Shown piece by piece: positions 2,761-31,711 of a stretch of DNA of 64,000 nt. The stretch covers positions 1-64,000 of the IMG/VR virus record IMGVR_UViG_3300026292_000003; one strand, written 5' to 3'. The number at the start of each line of letters is the position of its first letter. Positions within the stretch are counted from its first letter, which is position 1. The position numbers were made by a program, and so were the translations under genes. The notes beneath the pieces are model-generated. The model had not been told where the DNA came from. It saw nothing but the letters and a program-made list of their open reading frames with translations, and did not search any database.

Positions 2761-3204
2761 TTACTTGATTTCAATAGTTTTTGCTTTTTTAGCATCAGGG
2801 ATTATTCTTTCCATAGATACTTTAAGCAATCCATCTTTCAATTCAGCACCTTTAACTTCTACATCGTCAGCTACTGTGAATACTTTACTGAACATACGTT
2901 GTGATATACCTTTGTGCAGTACATCATTTCCATCAGCATCTTTGTTCACTTCCTTCTCTTTACTCTTTATAGTAAGCAAATTATCTTCATAGTTTACTAC
3001 TATATCATCTTTAGAGAAGCCAGCTAATGCTACTTCAATGTCGTAAGTATTGCTACCAGTTTTAACGATATTGTAAGGTGGGTAGTTTACTTGAGGTACT
3101 TGAAACACTTCATTATCAAACATTGATTCAAAGTGATCAAATATGTTATCAAAACCTACAGTTACAGGACGTAACTGATTAAAAATAGATAAATGTTTAT
3201 TCAT
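2761..3204 (-). CDS. hsp20: small heat-shock protein Hsp20/IbpA family
   Basis: NYPPYNI, ALAGF, LHKGISQRMF and GAELKDGLL alpha-crystallin motifs. Confidence 0.95.
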   Translation of the reverse strand: MNKHLSIFNQLRPVTVGFDNIFDHFESMFDNEVFQVPQVNYPPYNIVKTGSNTYDIEVALAGFSKDDIVVNYEDNLLTIKSKEKEVNKDADGNDVLHKGISQRMFSKVFTVADDVEVKGAELKDGLLKVSMERIIPDAKKAKTIEIK

Positions 3205-3500: not shown

Positions 3501-3779
3501 TTAGTAAGTATACTTGATTGACTTCTTCTTACCAACTGTACCATTGATTTTCTCAACAGTAATTCCAAGTTTACCAGCTTCTAATTGAGCAAATACACCT
3601 TGGTTAAGTGTTATACCACTTTTTAAACCTTCGTGAAACAACTGGCTTCTACCTATTTCAGTGTTACCAGCTTGTTTGCTCTCTGCTAAAAACCTTTTGA
3701 TCCACGTTCTAGCAGTCTCTTGTTTGTTCTCTTTCTTAACTTCAACAGTATTTTCTACTGTATTTGTAGTATTTTCCAT
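3501..3779 (-). CDS. hypothetical early protein, possibly DNA-binding
   Basis: AGGAG RBS, sigma70 promoter at 3813-3841, basic C-terminus. Confidence 0.75.
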   Translation of the reverse strand: MENTTNTVENTVEVKKENKQETARTWIKRFLAESKQAGNTEIGRSQLFHEGLKSGITLNQGVFAQLEAGKLGITVEKINGTVGKKKSIKYTY

Positions 3780-3812: not shown

Positions 3813-3841
3813 AATATACACTAATCAAGACGTCTTGTCAA
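3813..3841 (-). promoter_or_regulatory. sigma70-type promoter with palindrome CAAGACGTCTTG overlapping the -35 and spacer
   Basis: Minus strand TTGACA-17nt-TATATT. Confidence 0.8.
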
Positions 3842-3995: not shown

Positions 3996-4259
3996 ATGAG
4001 ACGTATTAAAAGCCCTGTATCCGATAAGGACTGGAAGAAACTGAAGCGAAAAGCTCCTAAAGTTCCAGATTACACCTGCCCTCAAATCGATGATGTGTTA
4101 GCACGTATCGAAAAGATAAAAGATAAACAGAAGTTGAGTCAATATCAACACGACTTAATAATGAAAAGAATGGAAGCCTTGCGTAAAGCAAATGACGCTC
4201 TACGTGAAAGTGGTATCTATTGGTATGAGATTGCAAAGAACATCAAAGACAACAACTAA
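3996..4259 (+). CDS. hypothetical protein
   Basis: ORF track 3894..4259; ATG 3996 has a GGAAGGAGG RBS and an upstream TAAATA. Confidence 0.7.
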   Translation: MRRIKSPVSDKDWKKLKRKAPKVPDYTCPQIDDVLARIEKIKDKQKLSQYQHDLIMKRMEALRKANDALRESGIYWYEIAKNIKDNN

Positions 4260-4360
4260 TCGTATATAAAAGGATCTTGGTCTTGAATCTTCTTTAGCTT
4301 CTTTTTCATAGCTCTACGATATTTCCATTCACGATACTTTTCTATTATCCATTTAAACAT
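4256..4360 (-). CDS. small basic protein (34 aa, MFKWIIEKYREWKYRRAMKKKLKKIQDQDPFIYD)
   Basis: Below the ORF-track cutoff; GGAG RBS; start overlaps the stop of the upstream gene. Confidence 0.65.
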   Translation of the reverse strand: MFKWIIEKYREWKYRRAMKKKLKKIQDQDPFIYD

Positions 4361-5348
4361 CTGTATCTCCATAGTTCTGTTCTAATTGCCAACCATATTG
4401 GTCTTTCCAAGTGTACGGCCAATCTCTACTGGCTAACAGTTTATTGTTTTCATCTAACAATTCAAATCGTTGTACATTGTTAAACATTTGTATATACTTC
4501 TTATACCACCATTGTTTATCTTCTGGTATTCGCCAACGTGCAATAATTGCATAACCTAATGCGTTAGCAGGATCGTTTTCATCAACACCTAATTGTTTTA
4601 ACCAAGTTCGGAATCCATCCCAATCAATATTTATATCATGGAATACCAAATCAAACTCTCCACTAACATATTTAATAGGTTGCATATCCTCTAATGGTAC
4701 ATTTGTATCTCCACTTAAATATGCTTCTATGAATTGCTTTCCTGTTTGTGGATAATGTAGTCTAACATCTCCGGTTTTGTATTCTTGCATTTGGAATTGG
4801 GATAGGTGTTCTGGTTCTATATTGTGTTTCACATTTGGATACAAACATACAATTATAGATCCACTACTACTATCTTTATTACGACTCCATAGTAGTCCTT
4901 CCATTTCATGACAGAAGTGATTGAATTGATTAATACTAAACCTAATTCCCTTTGGTGCATTTTGTGAAATAGGGTTAGGGGTTTCGTGATGTCCCATTAA
5001 AACTTCAAAGTGTCTATGTATATCATTTAATTGTTTTTGATTTACAGTATCAGCATAGAACTTCATATCAACAATATGATCTATATCGTTTAGTAATAGG
5101 TAATTGTTAACCTTGTCTATATGCCAATTCATTTCGTTGCATAACCATTCTAGGTCTCTGGTGTGCATATCACTCCAACCATGCAAACAGAAGTTCTTAT
5201 CTAATATTACATTGTCGTCATTTATATAGTCTTCGTGTAAACTCTTTGCCCACTTCTGCGATAGTTTAGTTTTAAATATATCATACTCTATCCAAAACTC
5301 TTCGTGCGTATCTGTATGCGTTAGCAATACTCTTAATGTTTTATACAT
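4353..5348 (-). CDS. hypothetical protein in radical SAM operon
   Basis: 331-aa ORF overlapping its neighbours. Confidence 0.8.
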   Translation of the reverse strand: MYKTLRVLLTHTDTHEEFWIEYDIFKTKLSQKWAKSLHEDYINDDNVILDKNFCLHGWSDMHTRDLEWLCNEMNWHIDKVNNYLLLNDIDHIVDMKFYADTVNQKQLNDIHRHFEVLMGHHETPNPISQNAPKGIRFSINQFNHFCHEMEGLLWSRNKDSSSGSIIVCLYPNVKHNIEPEHLSQFQMQEYKTGDVRLHYPQTGKQFIEAYLSGDTNVPLEDMQPIKYVSGEFDLVFHDINIDWDGFRTWLKQLGVDENDPANALGYAIIARWRIPEDKQWWYKKYIQMFNNVQRFELLDENNKLLASRDWPYTWKDQYGWQLEQNYGDTDV

Positions 5349-6282
5349 TGTAATTCTCTTTTATATAAGGTATCAAGTAATTGTGTGCAAATAGTTCATG
5401 CACTTTCCAATTAGGATGTGTTAGTACAGTTCTATAATATTCTTTATTGTCACGCACATCTGCCATACTGTGAGCAAACGTATATGGAAAGAACATTTTA
5501 TTAAATTCTTTTTGTAGAAATTTTGTTATATCTGGATTAAGATTTGTTTTAAAGTCATCTGATTCTCTAGCGATCTGTTCGTGTATAGTATTAACAGGAA
5601 CACATATCTCTACACAATTATCTCTAGGATATATATCTCGCTTTTCTATTTCAGGAACTTCTCTATACATACCTATAGCATCAATCATTATTACATTCTT
5701 AAACATAGCTTTAGTGGCCTGCATTAATCCATATGCTTGTACATACCTTGCAGGAATATCATCTACACTATCAAATATATCTATAGCATCTTTAAATCTT
5801 GGATCCAATAAGTGTTGAGTAAACTTATGAACACTATAAGTTTTAAATTTAGGATGTTCAGTGTGTGTATCCCAATGTACATTTAAACGTGTACTTCTAA
5901 ACGGATATGTATAGTTTAGTATAACAAGTGTATTGTCATCTATTTCGTTTTGTCTATTAATCATCTCTGCGAAGATTGCAGTATTACTATACCCACCTAC
6001 GGCATAGTTTTTATATTCTTTTATCCCAAGCTCTTGGTGTGCTATGTATGTAGTAGTAAGTCTTTCAGCTTGATGTTCCCAATCTGCTTCAGCTCGTTCT
6101 ATAGCATAGTATTTTTTATGATGTTCTGCTTTTCTATTCTTTACTGCTATACTACCATCAAACTCTAAATTTGCATTAAAGTTTTCTTTTGCCCAAGCAT
6201 TAATGTCGCCATAATGTTTTTGTACTAGTTCAGTACCTTTCATATAGCTACAACCAAATACTATAATTTTATTAATGCTCAA
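5341..6282 (-). CDS. SGNH/GDSL hydrolase-like protein
   Basis: IIVFGCSY block I, NYAVGGYSN block II, C-terminal THP; start probably TTG 6282 (track gives 6339). Confidence 0.6.
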   Translation of the reverse strand: MSINKIIVFGCSYMKGTELVQKHYGDINAWAKENFNANLEFDGSIAVKNRKAEHHKKYYAIERAEADWEHQAERLTTTYIAHQELGIKEYKNYAVGGYSNTAIFAEMINRQNEIDDNTLVILNYTYPFRSTRLNVHWDTHTEHPKFKTYSVHKFTQHLLDPRFKDAIDIFDSVDDIPARYVQAYGLMQATKAMFKNVIMIDAIGMYREVPEIEKRDIYPRDNCVEICVPVNTIHEQIARESDDFKTNLNPDITKFLQKEFNKMFFPYTFAHSMADVRDNKEYYRTVLTHPNWKVHELFAHNYLIPYIKENYNV

Positions 6283-7288
6283 TGCTACACTCCTTGTTAC
6301 ATATACCTGGCGTAAATGTTTTCCACATAATACTATCAAAGTAATTTAATATACTGTCAAATGATTTGTTCTGTAATTTCATATGGTCCACATTGAATAA
6401 TGATTTAAGTTCTTGTTTGCTAGAGTCTTCAACATATCTATTGTATAAGTCTCCTATATAACAACAAGGAAATACAGTACCATCTACGTGTACCATTAAT
6501 TCAGTACCCCATGACTGTAGACTTTTACAACTAAACTTCTTTTGCTCTACTGTTTGTTTAACACGTATAGGATTGTTTATATCTACTGTATCCTTTACAG
6601 TATCTATTGCGTCTGGTGTAATAGATAATTTATATAATAGCTTTCCGTCTTTGTCATAAACTCCACGTTTATAGTATTTATTATCCCAAAAAAACCCATA
6701 AGGTTTCTTAAATCTAATATCTTGTAAGCCCCATTCTTTACATTGAGCTTTAGCTTGTTCTAGTTGATGCTTGTTATATTCAAACATAAGATAGTCCCAC
6801 ATACCTTTGGCACCTGTACTTGTATAAGCTCTAATGTTTGCATCTATTCTATCCCACAATACTCCACGTCTATACATATTGTTAGTATCTTCTAAACCAT
6901 CAACACTAAAAAACATTTGATACTTGTTGTTATTCTTTAATATATTTCCTATAGCTTTCCATTGTTTAGTACTTCCTAGGCCACCATTTGTATTAACAAT
7001 AATGTACGCATCTTTATTCAAGTGCGTTACAGCATAATCAAGTATCTCTACTATTTCTGGATTAGCTATTGGGTCACCATAGTTACCACAGAACATTAAA
7101 CGTTTTACTCTGTTGTTTAATAGTTCTGGACTACACCAACTTTTAAATTGTTCTAGAGATACATTGTCTTGTATTAGATTTGGATTAAGAACTGTTGAGG
7201 AGTTTACATATCTTGGACAACCAGGACAGTATGCATTGCATCTAGTACTCAGTTCAAAGTGTAATAATAAATTATTGTTTGCCCACAT
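6272..7288 (-). CDS. radical SAM protein with C-terminal SPASM/twitch domain
   Basis: CNAYCPGC; GNYGDP; C-terminal C..DGTVFPCC..CxxxC. Confidence 0.9.
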   Translation of the reverse strand: MWANNNLLLHFELSTRCNAYCPGCPRYVNSSTVLNPNLIQDNVSLEQFKSWCSPELLNNRVKRLMFCGNYGDPIANPEIVEILDYAVTHLNKDAYIIVNTNGGLGSTKQWKAIGNILKNNNKYQMFFSVDGLEDTNNMYRRGVLWDRIDANIRAYTSTGAKGMWDYLMFEYNKHQLEQAKAQCKEWGLQDIRFKKPYGFFWDNKYYKRGVYDKDGKLLYKLSITPDAIDTVKDTVDINNPIRVKQTVEQKKFSCKSLQSWGTELMVHVDGTVFPCCYIGDLYNRYVEDSSKQELKSLFNVDHMKLQNKSFDSILNYFDSIMWKTFTPGICNKECSIEH

Positions 7289-8597
7289 TGAAGTCAGTCC
7301 TGTTATAGTGTGGAGCTAACTCTGGGAATGTTTCTAAGAAATTTTCTTCACGTATCTCATCTAACTTATTTGTAATACGTAAGAAGTCTTTATGTACATT
7401 GGCTTTATGATTGTCGGGAAACTCTGTCCAAAGATAATCTTTAATACTCTTGTAATACCACTCTAGTTTTTCATATATGTCTTTATCATTTTTATATTTT
7501 GCTAAATGAGAATCTAGTTTTTGATGTACAGTATGTTTTAATTCCGTAGGCATTGTTTTCATATGATACCAATCTGGATTAGTTAACACGTTACTAATAT
7601 GTAAGTTATTAATTTTTAATCCCAACTCAAACATCTTTTCTACATACTCTGGCATATGCCAAACGTTTAGTAATTGTATAGTAGGACTAACATTTAATTG
7701 TACAATGTCTTTGTGTTTTAATACTTCTGCAAAGTTTTCTTCTATCTTATCCCATCTAGTTCCTTTTCTAATATATTCAGCACGTGGTCCTATGTCATCT
7801 ATACTTGCCATAATCTGTACAAGATTAAAATGTTTCCAAAGGTCAACACACTTCCACTTCTTATAGTTTATTTTCATAAAGTTAGTGTTGTATCTTATCT
7901 TAACATCTTTTCTACCTTTGGCTATTAACTGTTCAAGTATATAATAATGCTCGTCCATAATTAATGGTTCGCCACCTGCAAAGTAAACTTCTTCTACCAT
8001 ATGCAAGTTACTGTCAATAACTTTCTTTATGTCTTGTTTACTAAAGTCATTAACGTGTACAATAGCAGAGTTCTCACTAGTTCTTTTATAAAGTTTCTTT
8101 TCATCTTCGTGCCACAAGTGACTTAGGTGTCCTCCACACATTCTACATTTCATATTACATAAGTTACTGAAACGAAAGTCCCAATATATAAGATCCATTT
8201 TATCTAATGATCCATCTGGGTTAGTTTGTTCAGCTTTAGGATACAAGTGATGATCGAATGTCCAGTTTGCATTTACTCTAAAGCTACGAATACCCTTGCC
8301 TTCTTGTTCATAACATTTCATACAAGACTTTGGCTTCTTACCATCTAGTAAATCTAATCTAAGTTTTTTATAATGATCGTTGTTCCATATCTCGTCCATG
8401 GTATTATCTTTTAAGTTACCAGCAACGTTACGCATATCAGTAATACAACATTGATATACATTTCCATTTGGCCAATGATGTATATGTATCCAAGGTATTA
8501 TACAAAACGATTTACTTGGTGGGTTCTTATAAAACTTTTTCTTATCATTAGGATTAGACATCAATGCTCTCCCACCAGGCTGTAAAGTTATCATCAT
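7272..8597 (-). CDS. radical SAM protein with N-terminal twitch/SPASM domain
   Basis: FCIIPWIH..GNVYQCC..CMKC, then CNMKCRMC and AGGEP. Confidence 0.9.
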   Translation of the reverse strand: MMITLQPGGRALMSNPNDKKKFYKNPPSKSFCIIPWIHIHHWPNGNVYQCCITDMRNVAGNLKDNTMDEIWNNDHYKKLRLDLLDGKKPKSCMKCYEQEGKGIRSFRVNANWTFDHHLYPKAEQTNPDGSLDKMDLIYWDFRFSNLCNMKCRMCGGHLSHLWHEDEKKLYKRTSENSAIVHVNDFSKQDIKKVIDSNLHMVEEVYFAGGEPLIMDEHYYILEQLIAKGRKDVKIRYNTNFMKINYKKWKCVDLWKHFNLVQIMASIDDIGPRAEYIRKGTRWDKIEENFAEVLKHKDIVQLNVSPTIQLLNVWHMPEYVEKMFELGLKINNLHISNVLTNPDWYHMKTMPTELKHTVHQKLDSHLAKYKNDKDIYEKLEWYYKSIKDYLWTEFPDNHKANVHKDFLRITNKLDEIREENFLETFPELAPHYNRTDFNVGKQ

Positions 8598-9903
8598 TTA
8601 CAATCTTTATTATATCTTGATTACGTCTTTCAGTATATTGTGTAAAGAACTTTTTAAAATCGTTTTCTTTGTTTTCTGTTGTATCAGTATCATCATAAGA
8701 CTTCTCAACTTTTCTTAAATAAGAAACAAGCCTTTGTAATTGATTTGCCTCGTCGGCTTTTAAAAACTCTTTGTTATTTGTAATCCAATCATCTATCTCA
8801 TCAGCCTTTGATTGTTTAATAATATTAGGTAATACATTTACACTTTGAAAACTAGGAAAACGTAAAAGGTTAACACTTAAATTAAAATAGTTTCTATTTT
8901 CAAATTGTTTTTTTAATTCTATTATGTCATCTAAGAACTTTGTAATACTAAACAAACAACCCCAACTGATTGTCATCATAATAGTAATTTGTGTAGCATT
9001 AGCTTTTTCTGCAAACTGTTTAAGATTAGTAAGCCACATATTATAATCAAGTCCAGCTCTAAGTAGTTCAGCATGGTCACCGTGTGCTTCACAGCTAGTG
9101 TATAAGTCAAACTCTTTAAACTTTTTACTGCAATCAATTAACTTATCAAGTCTTTTTTGATCCATAATAAGATTACTGTTAACTGCAAATTTAAACTTTT
9201 CGTTTTGACACTTCTCAACTAGTTCCCAAAATTGTGGACTACGTGTTGGCTCCCCACCTGTTACTCTAAGTTCTTGTAAATTATATCTTAAACTTTCATC
9301 AAACCATTCAAAGAATCTTCTTATATAAAAATTATCTTGAGGTCGTTTAGGTTCAAATGCGTATGCATGACTACCATCATTCTGATATGTCATACCACCA
9401 TCTGTTTTCATTTCTTTATACATTCCATTCTTTTTAATATCATTACTCCAAGTACTACTAAACTCTGCGTTACAATAACTACAAGCTAGGTTACATAGAT
9501 TATCAAAACTTATTTCTAATGTTTTAGGATCTACATCTTGATCCCACGGAATGTTTTTTATTTCTTCAATTTCTTTATCTGTATACAATGCACTCTTATA
9601 AGTTCTATCACTGTGAACTTCTTTGTCTGCATCTTCAACACGCCAACAATAATTACACTCAGCAGGTCTATTACCTTCTAGCATTTGTTTACGTATTTCT
9701 TTTTTAAAATTAGTATTGTGTAATGCGGCAGGGCTGTCGAATATTTCTTTACTAGGAATGTAATGTGCCTGTGGGTGATGGCAACTAGCAGTTCTGCCGT
9801 TGCTTAACCATACAGTACTGTTATACCACTTGGCCGCACAGAAGCTAGAACTAATCTTGTTATTTCTATCTCTAACGTGGTCTAAATACTTTTTGTCGGC
9901 CAT
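8554..9903 (-). CDS. radical SAM protein with N-terminal twitch domain
   Basis: FCAAKW..SCHHP..CNYCW, then CNLACSYC and TGGEP. Confidence 0.9.
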   Translation of the reverse strand: MADKKYLDHVRDRNNKISSSFCAAKWYNSTVWLSNGRTASCHHPQAHYIPSKEIFDSPAALHNTNFKKEIRKQMLEGNRPAECNYCWRVEDADKEVHSDRTYKSALYTDKEIEEIKNIPWDQDVDPKTLEISFDNLCNLACSYCNAEFSSTWSNDIKKNGMYKEMKTDGGMTYQNDGSHAYAFEPKRPQDNFYIRRFFEWFDESLRYNLQELRVTGGEPTRSPQFWELVEKCQNEKFKFAVNSNLIMDQKRLDKLIDCSKKFKEFDLYTSCEAHGDHAELLRAGLDYNMWLTNLKQFAEKANATQITIMMTISWGCLFSITKFLDDIIELKKQFENRNYFNLSVNLLRFPSFQSVNVLPNIIKQSKADEIDDWITNNKEFLKADEANQLQRLVSYLRKVEKSYDDTDTTENKENDFKKFFTQYTERRNQDIIKIVNDDNFTAWWESIDV

Positions 9904-11297
9904 TGAGTTCCTTTACATAGATTGTAGTAACCAATCAGTTCAGGAAACGTCTCACCAAAGTCTGTGTTTCTTCTTTTGTCATATTCAGTAATAAACTTAC
10001 CAAAATCAAATCTATTTTGCTCTACATTACCTACAGATGATTTGTACATAAATTGACAAAGTCTTTTTATTTGATCTATTTCATCGTCCCAAATAAATCC
10101 ACAATCTTTCATATGATAATTCTCCAACGCATATTTTGTCACTACATCTTCTAGATGCTCAAGCACTTTGTCTTTAGCATCTTTATTTAAATTACATATT
10201 GCCAACATATGAGGATAACGTAAATAGTTTGTCATCATAGGCAATCTATTTCCCTCCTCTATATGGTTGGTTATATACTTCTTACGCAATGATACAACAT
10301 CTTCAATAAATTTATGATATGTTGTAGCACTTAATATATTTACCGTAGTCATAAAGCTGAATATTAGAGGCATCTTTCCATATGTAGCATCTAGTATCTT
10401 TTTACAGTTACGATACCATCTATCATACTCTAATCCGTATCTAGCATACTCTGCCTGCTTACCTACACTTTCTCCGCTTGTAAATATTTGTATTTCTTTT
10501 AGCTTTGGTCCAGTCTTTAACATAAACTCTATAAGTCTGTCTATCATATGATCTGGTACACTTAAATTTGAATTAATACTTAACGTTAGTTCCTCGCTAG
10601 GGTCTTCACTAACTTTATCCATAACACTCCAACAATCTTTACTCATTAATGGTTCACCACCTGTAAGTCTGAGTGTATGTAAACTAGGATAAAGACTAGG
10701 CCACCACTTCCAAAATGCATCAACATATGGATTATGTTCTCTGTTTGGAATTATCTTTTTACCTTGTTCTTCTAATACTTCAAAGCTATTGTATTTTGTT
10801 GTAGTAGGATATGCACCGTGTTGTTTTATTTCGTCATACCACTTACTACTTAAATCTGGACTACAGTAAGCACACTTTAAATTACATACGTTACTAAAAC
10901 TTATTTCAAGGTAGGAAGGGTTAATATCATTTGTTCTTGCATTAAGAACATCAAACGTCCTAGGCTTACTCCAACTGACATTTGATTTATAAACACGATC
11001 ACTAAAATGTTCTTTGCCCATATCTTCAACACGCCAACAGTAGTCGCAACCAGATGGACGTTTACCGTCAAGCATCATTTGCATTTCTTTTTTCTTATGT
11101 TGTGTGTTGTGTAGGGCGGCTGGATTCTTTTCTATTTCGTGTATAGGAATCTTATGAACAGGTGGATGGTGGCAACTATGATTCATTCCTGTTTGCAAAT
11201 ATAGTGTATGTTGTAACCATTTTGCTAAACAAAAACTAGGGCTGATTCCATTTAAGTCATCACGTACCCTGTTAAGTTGATCTATAATTTTTGACAT
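9882..11297 (-). CDS. radical SAM protein with N-terminal twitch domain
   Basis: FCLAKW..SCHHP..CDYCW, then CNLKCAYC and TGGEP. Confidence 0.9.
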   Translation of the reverse strand: MSKIIDQLNRVRDDLNGISPSFCLAKWLQHTLYLQTGMNHSCHHPPVHKIPIHEIEKNPAALHNTQHKKKEMQMMLDGKRPSGCDYCWRVEDMGKEHFSDRVYKSNVSWSKPRTFDVLNARTNDINPSYLEISFSNVCNLKCAYCSPDLSSKWYDEIKQHGAYPTTTKYNSFEVLEEQGKKIIPNREHNPYVDAFWKWWPSLYPSLHTLRLTGGEPLMSKDCWSVMDKVSEDPSEELTLSINSNLSVPDHMIDRLIEFMLKTGPKLKEIQIFTSGESVGKQAEYARYGLEYDRWYRNCKKILDATYGKMPLIFSFMTTVNILSATTYHKFIEDVVSLRKKYITNHIEEGNRLPMMTNYLRYPHMLAICNLNKDAKDKVLEHLEDVVTKYALENYHMKDCGFIWDDEIDQIKRLCQFMYKSSVGNVEQNRFDFGKFITEYDKRRNTDFGETFPELIGYYNLCKGTQWPTKSI

Positions 11298-11307
11298 AAT
11301 AAAGCAT

Positions 11308-12294
11308 CTATTCTAAAGTATCCTCAACCTGATCTTCTCTTACCTGAGCTCCAAGTCTACTAGGATTAATATATACTTCTTTAAAGAAACGAGAACCTTC
11401 TTTACCTAAGTCTGCTATTTCTAAGCCAAGTTCTGATCTAATGTCATATCCTAGTTTATTACTTTCTTCTTGTAACTTTGCATAGTTCCATTTCATTCCA
11501 GTTCTTGGACATAGTTGATCTGAAGACTGTTCAAAATTTGGCAATACATTTTCTTTAAAATAATTTGATAACCAATCAAAGTCTCTAACGTTTTTCCAAT
11601 CCCAACTTTCTCTTTGAATGTTTGTCATATGACATCCAAGTCTAGCACCATAGATTGCCCACAGTCCATTCTCAACATCATCACCAACACTCATCCAAGT
11701 TAGTAAACGTTTATAGTTTTTATTGTGTACTTTAGCTTTTAGATATAACGGATCTATTACATCTCCATCTACTAATCCCATCTTAACACCTTCACGGAAA
11801 CCTGCTCTCCAGGCTTGAAGAGGACTAGCATTATTCATAACATCACAGTAAATATTATTCATTTGTACATAGTTAATATTCCAACAGAAATCAACCTGAG
11901 CTCGTTTATCTCCTGCTGGTGCATTTTCGTGTGTTTGCATTCCATATACAACTTCTTTTGGCCAACACTTAATACCACCATTACCATATACAAGACCGTT
12001 AACTATATTCTTACCAGCCCAACTAATAACGTCAGTATCTCTAATACGTTCCATATCTACTTCAATGCCAAAGAAATCTTCTTTAACAATGTTATCAGCA
12101 TCAATGCCAATAAATCTATCTGTCTCTGCCAAGTCTGCCGCGGCTTTGTGTGCGGCGTCACTTCCAAACACACCATGACTTCTTTTAGCCCATGGTGCTT
12201 TTTCAATTAAATTATTATAGTTCTCATCTGCGTTTGGTTCATCATAGCTAATAAAGACTATATCAAATTCATTGATACTAACCATTTTGCTCAT
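11308..12294 (-). CDS. GT-A fold glycosyltransferase-like protein
   Basis: DIVFISYDEP N-terminal strand, IDADN DxD motif, AWRAGFRE. Confidence 0.6.
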   Translation of the reverse strand: MSKMVSINEFDIVFISYDEPNADENYNNLIEKAPWAKRSHGVFGSDAAHKAAADLAETDRFIGIDADNIVKEDFFGIEVDMERIRDTDVISWAGKNIVNGLVYGNGGIKCWPKEVVYGMQTHENAPAGDKRAQVDFCWNINYVQMNNIYCDVMNNASPLQAWRAGFREGVKMGLVDGDVIDPLYLKAKVHNKNYKRLLTWMSVGDDVENGLWAIYGARLGCHMTNIQRESWDWKNVRDFDWLSNYFKENVLPNFEQSSDQLCPRTGMKWNYAKLQEESNKLGYDIRSELGLEIADLGKEGSRFFKEVYINPSRLGAQVREDQVEDTLE

Positions 12295-13297
12295 TTAATT
12301 CTTCTCCGTTTGTACTTACTGTTACGTAATTATTTCTAAAAACTATAAGTGGATCCTCTGGCCACTTAAAACTTAAATTAACTTTTGATTTCTTTTGTAG
12401 TAGATTTTCTACTGGTACTTGAAATGCACCAACTAAATTATCAATGCTATTGTCGCATACTACAAATTTCATTTGTTTCCTTCCATCAAAGTAATATAGT
12501 TCAGAGTCTTTAATATTGCTGTCTATATAAGCAGTATTATCTACTACGTTAATATTTATGTTAGATTTATCTTGTACATTTCGTTGCAGTATTCTTTTAG
12601 TTCCAAGGAAGTCCTGATTACGTATAAGACTAGCACTTAACGACCATCCATAGTTACTAAAGACTGTTTTTGCATATAAACTAATATTGTTCCAGTCAAC
12701 CTTCTCATTAATTGCAGTAGGAAGCTCAACAATTTGTTTTCCATTTTTAAATAAAGTTAATGGATCAACTTCAATACTGCTTATTAAATAGTCTGGATCG
12801 TTTTTCTTAGTAATATAGATATCTAATAATTTATTCTCAGATGATGCAATTTCCGTTATATCACTTAAATTTTTTAATCCTCTGATGTTACCTTTATTAG
12901 CTTCTATTACTATTTTTGCATCTTCATAAAACACTTTAGCAAATATTTCAGTAGCAGTAGGGTCAGCATCATATGTAAATGGGGTTAGCTTATTATGTTT
13001 TGCTTCAATGATTAATGTAGTGCTACGAAAATCAATATCCCATTTTTCATTTATCATATCCCATATCATACCATATCTTTTTAAACTGGCTTGACCTTTG
13101 ATAATTCTTTTGCAAACAGGATTCCAAGATTCTGCTTCCATGAAATTTTCTTTATCTTTTATTTCATTAGGAGTATTAGTAATCTTTTTTATTTTTCCAG
13201 AGGTCTTTTCAAAAACAATATAATATTTTCTTTTATTATAATGAGGATTAGTCCCCTCGTTTCGCTGTGCTTGTAAATGCTTGTCTGTGTCCATCAA
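12278..13297 (-). CDS. hypothetical protein
   Basis: 339-aa ORF within the operon. Confidence 0.75.
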   Translation of the reverse strand: MMDTDKHLQAQRNEGTNPHYNKRKYYIVFEKTSGKIKKITNTPNEIKDKENFMEAESWNPVCKRIIKGQASLKRYGMIWDMINEKWDIDFRSTTLIIEAKHNKLTPFTYDADPTATEIFAKVFYEDAKIVIEANKGNIRGLKNLSDITEIASSENKLLDIYITKKNDPDYLISSIEVDPLTLFKNGKQIVELPTAINEKVDWNNISLYAKTVFSNYGWSLSASLIRNQDFLGTKRILQRNVQDKSNININVVDNTAYIDSNIKDSELYYFDGRKQMKFVVCDNSIDNLVGAFQVPVENLLQKKSKVNLSFKWPEDPLIVFRNNYVTVSTNGEELNEQNG

Positions 13298-14111
13298 ATA
13301 TTTCTTTTGTTAAAAACTCTTGTTCTCCGTAATATAGATTAGTGTTTATAGCAAAGTTCTGAATTTTAACTTTAGCTCCACTACTAATCCAAGTATTCAA
13401 TCTATCTGTCCACTTTGGCCAGAATCCTATACAGCCATCACTTAACGTTGTAAGCATATTAACTGTTTTAAAAATATCGTTATGCAAGTTTTTATTTTCG
13501 TAGAGTACTACAGTATTAAGTATACTATGCATAATATCATTATTATAATATTTTGGTCTATGTTGTTCTTTAAAGTATTTTGCAAATACAGATCTCCAGT
13601 CTTGCATAAATGGGTCAGCAAGTTTATGATATGCTAATGCTAAATCAGTATCGTGTTTAAAGTAATACATATTTCCATATACAATATCCATATCGTAATC
13701 TTCTTTATATATCTGTAATTTTTTATTTTCTAATGCGTCACCTTTAAAATTATAAGACTCATTAAAGAAACATATATCATATTGATCAATTAAGAATTCC
13801 CATATACTATCATGATTTTCTTTTACTAAACTAGCAGGGTCAATTACTATATTATGCAAATAAGGTGTTGCCCAATATAACTGCCAATCATTACATCTAG
13901 TAGTTTCACTTGAACCAAATGGAAGTTCTATCATATGATCAAATGCATCGTGATAATGATGAGGTATTCTATCTTTATAGTTTGTAACAATAGCTACACT
14001 GGCATCTTTATTATGAGTTTTAATACTATAAGCCAATGCTGTTGCTTGTTCATATTCATAATCCTGCATAGCAGGAATTACATAACCTTGTCCTTGTTTA
14101 TGTTCCTGCAT
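13248..14111 (-). CDS. glycosyltransferase family 8-like protein, degenerate paralogue
   Basis: GYVIPA..Y..A.ALAYSIK..LYWATPY pattern parallels the adjacent GT; DxD altered (VIDPA). Confidence 0.55.
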   Translation of the reverse strand: MQEHKQGQGYVIPAMQDYEYEQATALAYSIKTHNKDASVAIVTNYKDRIPHHYHDAFDHMIELPFGSSETTRCNDWQLYWATPYLHNIVIDPASLVKENHDSIWEFLIDQYDICFFNESYNFKGDALENKKLQIYKEDYDMDIVYGNMYYFKHDTDLALAYHKLADPFMQDWRSVFAKYFKEQHRPKYYNNDIMHSILNTVVLYENKNLHNDIFKTVNMLTTLSDGCIGFWPKWTDRLNTWISSGAKVKIQNFAINTNLYYGEQEFLTKEIFDGHRQAFTSTAKRGD

Positions 14112-15009
14112 TAAGTGTCTCCAATACTTTATCTTTAATTCTACCTAGTGAACGTTTATTCATAACGTGTACATCTTGGTCTTGTGATTTTACTAAAATG
14201 TTTTTCCATTCTTCTTTTGGATCGTGTGCTATAAATATCCACTCGTTATCATTTGTCGCTTCGATGATATCATCTTTCTGACTCATATTAATTAGTGGTG
14301 TGTTGTCAAAGTTTCCAAACATATCTTCTTGCCCAATCATTCCTGTAAGTAAATGAACTGCTATACTTACACAATAGTCTGTTCTAAATAGTTTACTTGG
14401 AAAGTTATACAGATACTGATAAAACTCGTAGTTATCAGCAACGTGAGCCCACGTGTCAAAAAACATTTTACTAAAATCGCTACGGTCAAAGTACACTACA
14501 GTACTCCACCACATCTTAATACCTGCATCATATAACATTCGTTCTCGTTCAGCAGGAGGTTCGTTTCTTAGAGTTAATGCATTATCAAACATTATAACAC
14601 TCTCACCAGCGTCAAAGTATTTTAACAATACATCTGTTTTAACAATGTAATCAATATCTAGTAATAGTGTTTGTTCAAATGGACTGTATTCGTAAATTTT
14701 ATGTTTGTTACTGTTACTAAATTGTGCATTAAATTCTGTCCACGGACTATCATAGTGACGTCTGTGGTTTTCTTTCATCTCATCATTTGTCGTGATAATG
14801 TAATCAAAACATTTATTGATTAATTTTTCATCTTGACTTTGCTCAAGCCATTGCTCTGATCCTACATCAGTAACTAAGGCTACTGGAAGTTTAAGATTTT
14901 TCTTTACGTATAAGGCGGCAGTCATTGCCATACTAACATAATCTAATTGATCATTGTTGTAAGCAAAAAAGCATACACCTTGTTTGTCGGCGTATTCTTT
15001 CATTACCAA
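14098..15009 (-). CDS. glycosyltransferase family 8-like protein
   Basis: GVCFFAYNN..DY..A..A..VK; YSPFEQTLLLDIDY (DxD); HVMNK. Confidence 0.65.
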   Translation of the reverse strand: MVMKEYADKQGVCFFAYNNDQLDYVSMAMTAALYVKKNLKLPVALVTDVGSEQWLEQSQDEKLINKCFDYIITTNDEMKENHRRHYDSPWTEFNAQFSNSNKHKIYEYSPFEQTLLLDIDYIVKTDVLLKYFDAGESVIMFDNALTLRNEPPAERERMLYDAGIKMWWSTVVYFDRSDFSKMFFDTWAHVADNYEFYQYLYNFPSKLFRTDYCVSIAVHLLTGMIGQEDMFGNFDNTPLINMSQKDDIIEATNDNEWIFIAHDPKEEWKNILVKSQDQDVHVMNKRSLGRIKDKVLETLNAGT

Positions 15010-15350
15010 TCCATTATTTTCTTAATGTTCCTTGCCTTCTTTAGACGTTCGTTCTCAATATCAAATTCAGTAGTAGCACTAGTGTAAGCATCAACAAGTT
15101 TATCCATAAGTTCTTTTAAACTTTTTACAGTAACAGGATTTTGTCTACTATCAATTACTATAGCACTTTTCTTATCCATATCTAATAGTGTTTTTATAAA
15201 TGCAATCGTTTCGTGATTAGCAATAAACACACCACCAAGATAGTGTACTATCTGTAATTGTGCTACTCTATTTCGGATATTTCGTTTTTGGTTGTTTATA
15301 GTTAAGGCATAATTACTGAATTCTAATGCCTTTTCAAGTCTTTCATCCAT
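15003..15350 (-). CDS. hypothetical phage protein
   Basis: First gene after the dual promoter; AAGGAG upstream. Confidence 0.8.
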   Translation of the reverse strand: MDERLEKALEFSNYALTINNQKRNIRNRVAQLQIVHYLGGVFIANHETIAFIKTLLDMDKKSAIVIDSRQNPVTVKSLKELMDKLVDAYTSATTEFDIENERLKKARNIKKIMDW

Positions 15351-15391
15351 ATTAGAGTATACTCCTTTATCGTATATAATTATATACGTAC

Positions 15392-15420
15392 ATTATAAAG
15401 TATTTATCGATGTGTGTCAA
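15392..15420 (-). promoter_or_regulatory. consensus sigma70 promoter with a late promoter (GATAAATA) nested in its spacer
   Basis: TTGACA-cacatcgataaatactt-TATAAT. Confidence 0.85.
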
Positions 15421-31600: not shown

Positions 31601-31711
31601 TCTAATAGTATCATAATCAAATGCTTGAAAATTAGCATTTACATATGATTCATAAACTACTGTATAGTCTTCTGCCGCAAATATTTTATTTTGTCTAGTT
31701 TTCTGTGCCAT
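28610..31711 (-). CDS. gp6: baseplate wedge protein gp6-like
   Basis: DYDTIR..ENYND..NFLTTAE..SVFKLAEFLGYSPRR; ESLDSIRENAP..QDRMITAQDY. Confidence 0.85.
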   Translation of the reverse strand: MAQKTRQNKIFAAEDYTVVYESYVNANFQAFDYDTIRTAMVDYVSNTYPENYNDWIESAEFVSLLDVVAQFGHNLAYRVDLNARNNFLTTAEKQESVFKLAEFLGYSPRRNVPAYGEMKVVGVKTNEAVIGSAGTSLGGTEIKYEVTNDVNNLDDFITIINAVLQNSNQYGSPNKSVVLNNIKTDFYDLNNTPNQIKFDIEGTVTGSTKTFNIVSSDYDETNLTFKEKSPNSSSNFGMYFKNDGRGISSANTGFFFGVKQGDLLYQDFPIADPIDSNVIDINVANINNTDCFVQNVNATGNVVKEWTKVKDVNSNIVYNNLASGIRDIFSVKTRDNNQVSILFPDRTFGNIPKDTIRVWYRSSENTTYVLRPDDLTNKKINVNYTGQDGNTYTAVFTLQLKQAITNATSSESLDSIRENAPKNYASQDRMITAQDYNTILANNTGGVVKVKSINRTFSGHSRYSKFIDPTGEYSNLYLQGNDARLYQEEKLSTSSTSGTYNSSQTFEKFVKDIINNDEYINLYYTKYRNAFIGLKTQHSYVTDGMTWQSPSQTVSGVKTGYLTDNTNSIVRVGNTVSTYMQYITPGALIKFTTTSGSKWAKVVDVFNYGLGIEGTGTNAGEPTGVQNDGTGSIILDAEIPSNSTIDIIYPALSRNFSNRERDIIITYLDAKKSFSVKYNYVNKSWEVDTTPSAFSTSTVFPTDFNLSDDSWSIYFNYVNQQYDIYLRTLRFNFNSNAVKLGNIQNENEISSFTKKAKRDSIQALGVLNNNISKLGKFYVYGYDQIATNTYRTVLIDGNADSRPDDPDVFYNTVGTENISIGDNFYRGKENLNFEWEHIASDNQVVDPSFTNVIDVFALTTAYDTEYKNWLAGTVTNMPAPPTSYELGQLFASIGEKKAMSDTIVYKPVRYKCLFGTNADDSLKARFRVIKLIGSNITDSDLKNKTVEAIKEFFDASNWDFGETFYFTELAAYVHKKLAGVLSSFVIVPQGAGSVFGDMFEFTPNSDELIISDVSVNDIDIIQNITDENIRAGT

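What the first reader, a model, noticed from the sequence alone, without database searches (positions are those of the whole stretch)
4256..15420. 11-kb translationally coupled operon: four radical SAM enzymes, three GT-A glycosyltransferases and an SGNH hydrolase next to the tail-fibre genes
Seen: 12 minus-strand genes with mostly overlapping start and stop codons, driven by a consensus sigma70 promoter with a nested late promoter, immediately downstream of the baseplate and fibre genes. Known: radical SAM/SPASM enzymes perform sugar dehydrogenation, epimerisation or peptide modification; GT8/GT-A enzymes transfer sugars; SGNH proteins add or remove O-acyl groups. Inference: a phage biosynthetic cluster that makes an unusual glycan for the virion or host surface (receptor masking, superinfection exclusion), or modifies DNA. 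No precursor peptide is obvious, though the terminal 34-aa ORF is a candidate.
Basis: partly seen in the sequence, partly recalled or inferred. Interest (0 to 1): 0.7.

Follow-up and report, generated by a model that had tools for sequence, protein, structure and literature searches.

The report
Phage glycan operon with radical-SAM enzymes
A marine jumbo phage carries, right after its tail-fibre genes, a tightly packed 12-gene operon of sugar-transferring enzymes and four iron-sulfur "radical SAM" enzymes; its core is shared with a soil phage that can be grown in the lab, so its unknown chemistry can be tested.

Summary
Twelve minus-strand genes (15350 to 4256) overlap by 1-47 nt or sit 10 nt apart. 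They lie behind a perfect TTGACA-17-TATAAT promoter that encloses the phage's late motif ATAAATA, directly after the baseplate, giant-protein and fibre genes.

Gene assignments:
- Four genes are radical SAM enzymes. Three belong to the uncharacterised N-terminal-twitch family NF033640; the fourth has a C-terminal SPASM-like tail.
- g328 has a GT-A fold with an invariant DxD (pLDDT 94; Z up to 10.8 to GT-A enzymes).
- g303 and g287 are paralogs with a weak glycogenin/GT8 signal. g287 has lost the DxD.
- g332 is SGNH-like by motifs only.
- g115, g331 and the 34-aa ORF have no assignable function.

In 25 marine relatives the fibre genes plus g115-g303-g287-g339-g328 are fixed. The downstream part varies: other radical SAM paralogs, an SDR epimerase, sulfotransferase-like genes, ThyX and RpiB. 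The core also occurs in Ralstonia jumbo phage RsoM2USA.

Best reading: a soluble glycan-building and tailoring module, most likely decorating virion proteins. Host-surface remodelling is the main rival. The phage is Rak2/PA5oct-like, not T4-like.

The parts
15392..15420 (-). Promoter: TTGACA (15420-15415), 17-nt spacer, TATAAT (15397-15392). The late-type motif ATAAATA (15407-15401) lies inside the spacer.
   Evidence: the only 12/12 site in the region. ATAAATA is enriched upstream of ORF starts (46 of 78 copies); 44 sigma70-like sites scoring at least 11/12 in the genome, mostly before non-structural genes.
15003..15350 (-). g115: 115-aa protein of unknown function, first gene of the conserved core. 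AAGGAG lies at 15367-15362.
   Evidence: No family hit. 47-97% identical in the 25 marine loci. Homolog RsoM2USA_354: 26% identity, E 4e-12.
14098..15003 (-). g303: GT8-like (glycogenin-like) putative glycosyltransferase with invariant D116-x-D118.
   Evidence: Paralog of g287 (hhalign 96%, E 2e-9). The joint profile hits glycogenin at E 0.01 with the DxD aligned. 579 clusters in metagenomes, none with a Pfam domain. RsoM2USA_353: 29% identity, E 5e-40.
13248..14111 (-). g287: paralog of g303 whose DxD is degenerate (I-D-P/C-A). Possibly non-catalytic.
   Evidence: Profile hits glycogenin-1 at E 0.006. Alignments. RsoM2USA_352: 24% identity, E 7e-17.
12278..13294 (-). g339: non-enzymatic protein modelled as three tandem Ig/FN3-like beta-sandwich domains.
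   Evidence: AlphaFold2 pLDDT 79. Foldseek finds FN3 arrays in PDB at E 4e-5 and uncharacterised phage proteins in BFVD at E 6e-17 to 6e-9. Per-domain Z is only about 4. hhalign to RsoM2USA_351 gives E 2.8e-4.
11308..12294 (-). g328: GT-A-fold glycosyltransferase (GT2-like N-terminal domain, residues about 4-155, invariant D65-x-D67) with a helical C-terminal domain. It is the most conserved gene of the operon.
   Evidence: AlphaFold2 pLDDT 94. All top Foldseek hits in PDB and Swiss-Prot are GT-A enzymes. VIA Z 10.8-8.5. Relatives are fused to GT-B domains. 73-98% identical across loci. RsoM2USA_350: 49% identity.
9882..11297 (-). g471: N-terminal-twitch radical SAM enzyme. This is the 'core' type, always next to g328.
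   Evidence: NF033640 320.7 bits against a cut-off of 170. CNLKCAYC motif. Phage-only clade with RsoM2USA_349 (43-44% identity) and all g328-adjacent radical SAM genes, support 100/99.
8554..9903 (-). g449: N-terminal-twitch radical SAM enzyme, a paralog within the g471 clade.
   Evidence: NF033640 286 bits. 35% identical to g471. Tree.
7272..8597 (-). g441: N-terminal-twitch radical SAM enzyme of a type shared with bacteria.
   Evidence: NF033640 405 bits. Pfam SPASM at residues 32-96 and Radical_SAM at 143-295. Groups with Bacteroidota, Pseudomonadota and Bdellovibrionota homologs.
6272..7288 (-). g338: radical SAM enzyme in the usual domain order (N-terminal CNAYCPGC, C-terminal SPASM-like Cys cluster).
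   Evidence: PF04055 at 28.5-30 bits, sub-threshold SPASM hit at E 6e-4, NF033640 core only at 68 bits, below the cut-off.
5341..6282 (-). g332: SGNH/GDSL-like putative esterase or acyltransferase. Likely start is TTG 6282.
   Evidence: Conserved motifs G-C-S-Y-x-K-G, N-Y-A-V-G-G-Y-S-N and T-H-P-N. ESM-Atlas neighbours are named SGNH/GDSL, score 0.95. No Pfam or PDB hit.
4353..5348 (-). g331: conserved protein of unknown fold and function, with several conserved His/Glu/Asp residues.
   Evidence: No Pfam, PHROG or PDB relative. A 25%-identical homolog ends the cluster in L022-L024.
4256..4360 (-). g38: 34-aa basic peptide MFKW...DPFIYD (38 aa from the upstream ATG). Last ORF of the operon.
   Evidence: 73% identical in L002 with conservative K/R changes. 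Not found in the other loci.

Best explanation
The operon is a phage-encoded, entirely soluble (cytoplasmic) glycoconjugate-building module with two parts.

Fixed core. A DxD-bearing GT8-like transferase (g303), its DxD-less paralog (g287) and a GT-A/GT2-like transferase (g328) transfer sugars from host nucleotide-sugars. A dedicated N-terminal-twitch radical SAM enzyme (g471 type) alters a sugar or the acceptor by hydrogen-atom abstraction. Oxidation, epimerisation, decarboxylation or C-C/C-methyl chemistry are possible, as in BtrN and BlsE.

Variable tail. In this phage it holds three more radical SAM enzymes, an SGNH-like O-acyl esterase or transferase, and g331. In relatives it instead holds an SDR epimerase/dehydratase, Stf0-like sulfotransferases, RpiB and other radical SAM paralogs. 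This tail diversifies the product between strains, much as the variable part of an O-antigen locus does.

Most likely target. The product is probably attached to phage proteins made from the same region: the Ig/FN3-like g339 encoded inside the operon and/or the fibre proteins g201, g304 and g370 just upstream. That would give the virion a strain-specific sugar coat at its host-recognition end.

Shown versus inferred. Shown: gene order, overlaps, promoter, the radical SAM families, the GT-A fold of g328, the Ig-like model of g339, absence of membrane segments, and the conserved core versus variable tail. Inferred: that the enzymes act in one pathway, the chemistry of the radical SAM steps, and the virion target.
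For: Operon and promoters.

Enzyme assignments:
- Radical SAM and NF033640, with intact CxxxCxxC and N-terminal cluster cysteines.
- Nearest solved relatives of the twitch family include the sugar or nucleoside-sugar enzymes BlsE (E 8e-7) and BtrN; the BtrN twitch domain aligns to the N-terminus at E 7e-5.
- g328 GT-A fold and DxD.
- Recurrent fusions of the g328 domain to GT-B glycosyltransferase domains.
- g303/g287 link to glycogenin.

Sugar theme in relatives: SDR epimerase/dehydratase, Stf0-like sulfotransferases and RpiB.

One pathway: the core order is fixed in 25 loci and in RsoM2USA. The g471-type radical SAM forms a phage-only clade that always sits next to g328.

Virion target:
- The operon always follows the same fibre genes, and in RsoM2USA it follows structural genes.
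- It carries the late motif used by the structural genes.
- An Ig/FN3-like protein sits between the transferase genes.
- No product has a membrane segment, and there is no flippase, polymerase or lipid-carrier transferase.

Precedents from established knowledge: mycobacteriophage virion glycosylation (Freeman et al. 2023, cited in PMC12619734), and chlorovirus and mimivirus capsid or fibril glycans.
Against: - No glycan, acceptor or enzyme activity has been observed.
- The GT8 assignment of g303 and g287 is weak (E 0.006-0.01, no Pfam hit).
- The per-domain fold matches for g339 are generic (Z about 4), and nothing shows that it is a virion component or an acceptor.
- The consensus sigma70 promoter predicts early expression as well. 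That would suit host remodelling or DNA modification better than decoration of late proteins.
- N-terminal-twitch radical SAM genes also occur singly elsewhere in this genome, with their own promoters, and in bacteria in unrelated neighbourhoods. Some radical SAM genes in the operon may therefore act independently.
- No nucleotide-sugar synthesis gene was found in the 221 kb held.
- The g303-g287 complex prediction gave no verdict.
Confidence: 0.4

Rival explanations
1. Host-envelope remodelling. The enzymes act on the host's LPS, capsule or S-layer glycan intermediates at the inner face of the membrane. They change the cell surface during infection to block superinfection or to stop progeny being trapped on debris. 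This was proposed for glycosyltransferases in the 'host recognition cluster' of pelagimyophages.
For: - Zaragoza-Solas et al. 2020 (PMC7029224) describe GT8-rich variable islands with radical SAM cassettes next to fibre genes and favour this reading.
- The perfect sigma70 promoter predicts early expression.
- GT8 and GT2 enzymes are typical of LPS and capsule synthesis (established knowledge).
- Strain-variable tailoring genes resemble O-antigen loci.
Against: - None of the 12 products has a membrane segment. There is no Gtr-type flippase, bactoprenol transferase, Wzx/Wzy or membrane O-acetyltransferase.
- The core is shared by phages of very different hosts (marine bacteria and Ralstonia), whose surface glycans should differ.
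- An Ig/FN3-like protein is embedded in the operon.
- Fixed linkage to fibre genes and a late motif.
Confidence: 0.25
2. Composite island. Only the proximal core is one functional unit. The distal radical SAM, SGNH-like and g331 genes are independent cassettes with unrelated roles (metabolic reprogramming, counter-defence, or modification of other phage proteins) that have accumulated in a recombination hot spot.
For: - The distal part differs in number and type between close relatives.
- The genome has six further radical SAM genes scattered in the non-structural region, several with their own sigma70-like promoters.
- g441 groups with bacterial enzymes that sit in heterogeneous neighbourhoods.
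- ThyX, an ordinary nucleotide-metabolism gene, is inserted in the same place in some relatives.
Against: - All junctions in this operon overlap or are 10 nt apart, and no internal promoter is as good as the first.
- Cassettes in relatives are likewise overlapping and keep a sugar theme: SDR, sulfotransferase-like, RpiB.
- The g471 type is tied to g328 even in RsoM2USA.
Confidence: 0.2
3. DNA hypermodification. The transferases and radical SAM enzymes build a modified, glycosylated base in phage DNA to evade restriction.
For: - Phage glycosyltransferases often modify DNA (Pyle et al. 2024, cited in PMC12619734).
- An early-type promoter is present.
- ThyX lies inside the cluster in some relatives.
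- Radical SAM enzymes take part in 7-deazaguanine and thymidine hypermodification (established knowledge).
Against: - No ThyA-type hydroxymethylase and no ThyX in the 221 kb held. Only about 60% of the genome is held, so this is not conclusive.
- Position and conserved synteny within the fibre module, plus a late motif.
- No DpdA/QueC-type genes were seen in the cluster.
- An Ig-like protein lies in the operon.
Confidence: 0.07
4. Peptide or small-molecule natural product. The SPASM/twitch radical SAM enzymes mature a ribosomal peptide, such as the 34-aa terminal ORF, or build a nucleoside or aminoglycoside-like metabolite that the transferases then glycosylate.
For: - SPASM/twitch enzymes commonly mature peptides; SkfB is the best PDB match (E 7e-11).
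- A conserved 34-aa ORF ends the operon.
- GT-A S-glycosyltransferases such as SunS and ThuS are among the fold matches.
- One bacterial homolog sits beside an ABC exporter, an FkbM methyltransferase and a GT2.
Against: - The 34-aa ORF has no Cys, Ser or Thr-rich core and is found in only 2 of about 26 loci.
- There is no leader-recognition (PqqD-like) domain, protease or exporter in the operon.
- The core lacks any small ORF other than g115.
Confidence: 0.08

Closest known systems
Virus-encoded virion glycosylation systems: mycobacteriophage capsid and tail glycosylation (Freeman et al. 2023), chlorovirus PBCV-1 A64R, and mimivirus fibril glycosylation clusters
   Same: - Virus-encoded soluble GT-A transferases that act in the cytoplasm on the virus's own structural proteins.
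- Cluster content varies between lineages.
- PBCV-1 A64R and STIV A197 are among the structural matches of g328 (Z 8.6 and 9.3).
   Different: - None of those systems is known to include radical SAM enzymes.
- Here no glycan or acceptor has been shown.
- The GT families are not the same by sequence.
Host recognition cluster (HRC) of pelagimyophages and cyanomyophages (Zaragoza-Solas et al. 2020, PMC7029224)
   Same: A hypervariable island after the giant VrlC-like gene that holds fibre genes, GT8-type glycosyltransferases and 'radical SAM cassettes' differing between close genomes.
   Different: - That description is at the level of gene categories and favours host O-chain modification.
- It does not define the conserved g115-GT8-GT8'-Ig-GT2-radical SAM core, the twitch family or the Ig-like member.
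- This phage is Rak2/PA5oct-like by its baseplate.
Twitch-domain radical SAM enzymes acting on sugars: BtrN (2-deoxy-scyllo-inosamine dehydrogenase) and BlsE (cytosylglucuronate decarboxylase)
   Same: A radical SAM core plus one auxiliary [4Fe-4S]-binding twitch domain. Profile matches are E 8e-7 to BlsE and E 7e-5 to the BtrN twitch domain.
   Different: - The twitch domain is at the N-terminus here (circularly permuted order).
- The matches are distant.
- SkfB, a peptide-modifying enzyme, scores better (E 7e-11).
- I found no characterised member of NF033640.
Bacterial O-antigen and capsule biosynthesis loci
   Same: A conserved part plus a strain-variable set of transferases and tailoring enzymes (acyl, sulfo, epimerase), with GT2 and GT8-like enzymes.
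   Different: - No initiating phosphoglycosyl transferase, flippase, polymerase or exporter, and no membrane protein at all.
- Radical SAM enzymes dominate the tailoring set.
Ralstonia phage RsoM2USA ORF354-ORF348 (MG752970)
   Same: Same order of homologs: g115, g303, g287, a short g339-like gene, g328, g471 and a second g328 paralog, next to structural genes.
   Different: - Only one radical SAM gene, and no SGNH-like or g331 gene.
- All are annotated as hypothetical proteins and were not discussed in the phage's paper.

Membership tests
Radical SAM superfamily (PF04055) | CxxxCxxC motif for the SAM-binding [4Fe-4S] cluster, and a Pfam score over the cut-off | tested here: met
   Motifs: CNLKCAYC (g471), CNLACSYC (g449), CNMKCRMC (g441), CNAYCPGC (g338). 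PF04055 scores are 33-46 bits against a cut-off of 29.5 for three genes. g338 scores 28.5 by hmmscan and 30 in the genome search.
NF033640 N_Twi_rSAM (N-terminal twitch radical SAM) | Whole-protein score over the curated cut-off of 170 bits | tested here: met
   g441 405 bits, g471 321 bits, g449 286 bits. g338 scores 68.5 bits and is NOT a member.
NF033640 N_Twi_rSAM | Auxiliary-cluster cysteines located N-terminal to the radical SAM core | tested here: met
   Invariant C20, C38 and C83 lie ahead of C135/C139/C142 in 11 paralogs. Pfam SPASM matches residues 32-96 of g441. The BtrN C-terminal twitch aligns to profile positions 17-83.
GT-A fold glycosyltransferase (g328) | Rossmann-like GT-A nucleotide-binding domain | tested here: met
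   Model pLDDT 94. All top Foldseek hits are GT-A enzymes. VIA Z is 10.8 (B4GALNT1), 10.2 (a Leptospira GT) and 9.6 (WrtF) over about 140 residues. Nucleotidyltransferases of the same fold also match at Z about 9.
GT-A fold glycosyltransferase (g328) | DxD metal/nucleotide-sugar binding motif | tested here: met
   D65 is nearly invariant and D67 invariant in 63 sequences down to 32% identity.
CAZy GT2 / Pfam Glycos_transf_2 (g328) | Sequence membership (PF00535 over its cut-off) | tested here: not met
   No Pfam hit for g328. Only sub-threshold PF00535 hits in two long relatives (E 0.001-0.004). It is best called GT2-like by fold.
CAZy GT8 (g303, g287) | Sequence membership (PF01501) or a significant match to solved GT8 enzymes | tested here: inconclusive
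   No PF01501 hit in 26 members even at E 1. Profiles hit glycogenin only, at E 0.006-0.01 over the first ~100 residues, with the DxD aligned.
CAZy GT8 (g303, g287) | DxD motif | tested here: met
   Met for g303: D116 and D118 are invariant. NOT met for g287, which has I-D-P/C-A with a single Asp.
SGNH/GDSL hydrolase (g332) | Blocks I (GDS-like Ser), II (Gly), III (Asn) and V (DxxH) | tested here: inconclusive
   Block I-like G-C-S-Y-x-K-G, block II-like N-Y-A-V-G-G-Y-S-N and block V-like T-H-P-N are conserved. Block III and the block V Asp are unclear. No Pfam or PDB hit. ESM-Atlas feature neighbours are named SGNH/GDSL.
Translationally coupled operon | Same strand, overlapping or abutting stop and start codons, one strong upstream promoter | tested here: met
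   Coupling itself was not testable. Metatranscriptome libraries hold matching contigs, but DNA carry-over is not excluded.
Wzx/Wzy- or ABC-dependent surface polysaccharide pathway; Gtr-type serotype conversion | Membrane components: initiating transferase, flippase, polymerase/exporter or GtrA/B | tested here: not met
   The maximum 19-residue Kyte-Doolittle mean is at most 1.51 for all 12 products, and there are no such Pfam families.
RiPP biosynthetic cluster | Precursor peptide with a modifiable core, plus a leader-recognition element | tested here: not met
   The only small ORF (34 aa) lacks a Cys/Ser/Thr-rich core and is present in 2 loci only. No PqqD-like domain was found.
Phage DNA glycosylation system | Enzyme making the hydroxymethyl-pyrimidine (ThyA-type) or another acceptor base | tested here: inconclusive
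   No PF00303 or PF02511 match in the 221 kb held, but the record is about 60% complete.

The most novel reading that the evidence does not exclude
Jumbo phages of the sea, and RsoM2USA in soil, carry a viral 'serotype locus'. A fixed GT8/GT8'/Ig-like/GT2/twitch-radical-SAM core builds a glycan on the phage's own host-recognition apparatus. Swappable radical SAM cassettes then rewrite that glycan by C-H chemistry (epimerisation, oxidation, deoxygenation, C-methylation). This would be the first role for the uncharacterised N-terminal-twitch radical SAM family and the first radical-SAM-tailored virion glycan.
Probability: 0.25. Interest if true: 0.85.

Novelty: new variant of a known kind. Interest (0 to 1): 0.6.

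Why it matters
Virus-encoded glycosylation is known, and islands with glycosyltransferases and radical SAM cassettes beside fibre genes have been noted in marine myophages. However, nobody has defined a conserved unit in them or assigned any chemistry.

This analysis separates a fixed six-gene core from a variable tailoring set. The core is widespread: 579 protein clusters at 90% identity for g303, and more than 1,200 clusters at 50% identity for the g328 family.

The analysis ties one clade of the uncharacterised NF033640 radical SAM family to a GT-A transferase. It also finds the same core in a cultivable phage with a tractable host, Ralstonia phage RsoM2USA. That makes the function of a large, phage-expanded radical SAM family testable by genetics and virion or DNA mass spectrometry; this genome alone has ten radical SAM genes.

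If the product sits on the fibres, it would add a new layer to how phages vary or protect their host-recognition end.

Tried and rejected
- Megablast of the whole operon against 50,697 phage records: no match. tblastn of g303, g328 and g441 found only RsoM2USA, plus weak radical SAM core hits in Vibrio phages.
- Pfam, PHROG and NCBIfam gave nothing for g115, g303, g287, g339, g328, g332, g331 or g38.
- Profile searches of the PDB gave nothing for g303 alone, g332, g331 or g201, and only a weak GmaR hit (E 0.12) for g328.
- Scanning each g303/g287 family member against Pfam at E 1 gave no GT8 hit.
- The ESM Atlas search was uninformative for g339.
- The first scan of genome contigs with g441 alone, and one with too divergent an alignment, failed. 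A narrower alignment worked.
- Bacterial neighbourhoods of the twitch radical SAM genes showed no common theme.
- g201 is not homologous to the MS-verified RsoM2USA structural protein ORF356.
- Complex prediction for g303 with g287: no verdict (score 0.00). This is not evidence either way.
- The idea that the phage is a T4-like cyanophage or pelagiphage was rejected: the baseplate wedge is closest to PA5oct/Rak2-like jumbo phages.
- The link to 'moraphages' (PMC12619734) was considered but not established.
It was repeated without them.

Full report
**Observation.**
The region holds twelve minus-strand genes, named here by length: g115, g303, g287, g339, g328, g471, g449, g441, g338, g332, g331 and g38. 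With the best-supported start codons, every junction is an overlap of 1-47 nt or a 10-nt gap. Upstream of g115 lies the only 12/12 sigma70 consensus in the region: TTGACA at 15420-15415, a 17-nt spacer, and TATAAT at 15397-15392. The spacer contains ATAAATA at 15407-15401.

ATAAATA behaves as this phage's late motif. Of the 78 copies in the 221-kb record, 46 lie within 60 nt upstream of an ORF start. In the window these precede structural genes. Sigma70-like sites scoring at least 11/12 are common in the genome (44), mostly before non-structural genes. The operon is therefore predicted to be read both early and late.

Upstream of the operon lie a baseplate wedge, a baseplate hub, a 3499-aa giant protein and three fibre-region genes, g201, g304 and g370.

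**What the genes are.**
*Radical SAM enzymes.* g471, g449 and g441 score 286-405 bits on NCBIfam NF033640 (cut-off 170). This is the N-terminal-twitch radical SAM family. They have intact CxxxCxxC motifs and conserved N-terminal cluster cysteines. g338 is a radical SAM enzyme in the usual domain order, with a weak C-terminal SPASM-like region. A profile of the twitch enzymes finds SkfB (E 7e-11), the nucleoside-sugar decarboxylase BlsE (E 8e-7) and BtrN. The C-terminal twitch domain of BtrN aligns to the N-terminus of the phage enzymes. I found no paper on an N-terminal-twitch enzyme.

*g328.* No family library recognises it. A 63-sequence alignment from an exhaustive search (1,202 clusters) gave a model with pLDDT 94. 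Its first ~155 residues form a GT-A domain. Every leading Foldseek hit in PDB and Swiss-Prot is a GT-A glycosyltransferase. VIA-align gives Z 10.8-8.5 to B4GALNT1, a Leptospira transferase, WrtF, STIV A197 and PBCV-1 A64R. The motif D65-x-D67 is conserved. In about 730-aa relatives, the g328 domain is fused behind a GT-B (GT28/UDPGT-like) domain.

*g303 and g287.* They are paralogs (hhalign 96%, E 2e-9). Their profiles hit only glycogenin (GT8), at E 0.006-0.01, with the DxD aligned. g303 keeps an invariant DxD, and g287 does not.

*g332.* It has conserved SGNH-like blocks I, II and V and SGNH/GDSL-named neighbours in the ESM Atlas. It has no Pfam or PDB match.

*g339.* Its model (pLDDT 79) is three tandem Ig/FN3-like sandwiches. 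It matches FN3 arrays in PDB and, much better, uncharacterised phage proteins.

*g115, g331 and g38.* These remain unassigned.

None of the twelve products has a membrane segment.

**Relatives.**
A scan of IMG/VR with g303 returned 25 loci. In all of them the order g201-g304-g370-g115-g303-g287-g339-g328 is kept wherever the contig reaches far enough. g328 is 73-98% identical across them.

Downstream, the content changes. There are different numbers and types of radical SAM genes at 22-47% identity. Some loci carry an SDR epimerase/dehydratase, two Stf0-like sulfotransferase genes, ThyX or RpiB.

Among 50,697 cultured phage records, only Ralstonia jumbo phage RsoM2USA has the module. It carries homologs of g115, g303, g287, g328 and g471 in the same order, plus a second g328 paralog. 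A 184-aa gene sits in the g339 position and aligns weakly to the most conserved part of g339 (E 2.8e-4).

A maximum-likelihood tree places g471, g449, RsoM2USA_349 and every g328-adjacent radical SAM in one phage-only clade (support 100/99). g441 groups with enzymes from Bacteroidota, Pseudomonadota and Bdellovibrionota.

For the distal half, however, the variability is real.

**Which phage.**
The record is 221,643 bp and about 60% complete. Its baseplate wedge is closest (36%) to PA5oct-, Rak2- and XacN1-like jumbo myoviruses. This is consistent with the shared structural gene order in RsoM2USA. It is therefore a marine jumbo phage, not a T4-like cyanophage.

It carries ten radical SAM genes, eight of them N-terminal-twitch. 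It also has a further g328 paralog at about 76.9 kb.

**Mechanism.**
The best-supported reading is a soluble glycan-building and tailoring module. g303 (perhaps with the DxD-less g287) and g328 transfer sugars. The g471-type radical SAM performs a fixed radical step. The variable enzymes diversify the product between strains.

For the target I favour phage proteins from the same region, for five reasons:
- The linkage to fibre and structural genes is conserved between phages whose hosts are unrelated.
- The operon has the late motif of the structural genes.
- An Ig/FN3-like protein is encoded between the transferase genes.
- No membrane machinery is present.
- Virus-encoded virion glycosylation has precedents.

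This is inference, and nothing here shows a glycan or an acceptor.

The main rival is host-surface remodelling, as proposed for pelagimyophage host-recognition clusters (PMC7029224). It gains support from the consensus early promoter. A second rival is that the distal cassettes are functionally independent. It rests on the scattered solitary twitch radical SAM genes in this genome, which have their own promoters, and on the heterogeneous bacterial contexts.

DNA modification lacks a hydroxymethylase or other acceptor-forming gene in the DNA held. The peptide-maturation idea lacks a credible precursor.

**Other evidence.**
Four marine metatranscriptome libraries contain 200-850-nt contigs that are 90-97% identical to most of g471 through g115. 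This is compatible with transcription of relatives in the sea, but DNA carry-over cannot be excluded. A complex prediction for g303 with g287 gave no verdict.

**Novelty and verdict.**
The category (glycosyltransferases and radical SAM cassettes in a variable island beside fibre genes) has been noted before (PMC7029224). In the library searched I found no paper that describes any of the following:
- the fixed core
- its Ig-like member
- the tie between one twitch radical SAM clade and a GT-A transferase
- the presence of the module in a cultivable phage

I rate it a new variant of a known kind, with moderate to high interest. The main reasons are that it gives a large uncharacterised radical SAM family a testable context and points to a tractable model phage.

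Noticed in passing
G000 (whole 221,643-bp record): about 169.9-172.4 kb, 185.2 kb, 192.6-195.0 kb and 208.4-209.6 kb: There are six further radical SAM genes outside the operon, five of them N-terminal-twitch (NF033640). They lie in the non-structural region, and some have their own sigma70-like promoter, for example at 192560 and 207997. Their roles are unknown.
   Followed up: partly
window 28610-31711 and the whole window: The baseplate wedge is closest (36%) to PA5oct/Rak2/XacN1-like jumbo myoviruses, and the record is about 60% complete. The window therefore comes from a marine jumbo phage of roughly 370 kb, not a T4-like cyanophage or pelagiphage.
   Followed up: partly
G000, genome-wide; in the window at 15401, 18082, 32097, 38589, 45887, 45910, 49911, 57234 and 59782: ATAAATA is strongly enriched just upstream of ORF starts (46 of 78 copies within 60 nt) and precedes structural genes in the window. 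It looks like a late-promoter motif for this lineage.
   Followed up: partly
L021:13621-14289, L022-L024:13619-14281, L108:13624-14292: In a subset of relatives a ThyX (flavin-dependent thymidylate synthase) gene sits in frame-overlapping position between the g328 homolog and the radical SAM genes. It may be an ordinary nucleotide-metabolism gene that landed in the island, or it may be part of the chemistry.
   Followed up: no
L018:17715-19425, L010:18884-19747, L108:20551-20897: The variable parts of the relatives' clusters carry two Stf0-like sulfotransferase genes (weak Pfam hits), an NAD-dependent epimerase/dehydratase and an RpiB/LacAB sugar-phosphate isomerase.
   Followed up: partly
L085 (NZGL01000017.1, 'Gammaproteobacteria bacterium MED685' MAG contig, 43,996 bp): This contig carries homologs of g115, g303, g287 and g328 plus twitch radical SAM genes in phage order. 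It is probably a phage contig binned into a bacterial MAG, or possibly a hint to the host.
   Followed up: no
G000:C1:76908-77579 (+): A second, diverged g328-type GT-A gene (28% identity) lies outside the operon.
   Followed up: no
window 2761-3204 (-): An Hsp20-family small heat-shock protein gene (PHROG 432, E 5e-43) lies just beyond the operon's 3' end.
   Followed up: no
window 18107-28606 (-); L108:1-6943: The giant 3499-aa structural protein is VrlC-like in position. Its 3571-aa homolog in a relative has a weak CBM_5_12 carbohydrate-binding hit.
   Followed up: no
window 3813-3841 (-) and 3501-3779 (-): A second near-consensus sigma70 promoter (11/12) lies just downstream of the operon, in front of a 92-aa ORF of unknown function. 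It marks the operon's 3' boundary together with a weak terminator-like hairpin at 4057-4043.
   Followed up: no
P0206, P0208, P0222, P0275 (about 715-810 aa metagenomic proteins): These are natural fusions of an N-terminal GT-B (GT28/UDPGT/EryCIII-like) domain to a C-terminal g328-type GT-A domain. The one contig retrieved was too short to show the context.
   Followed up: partly
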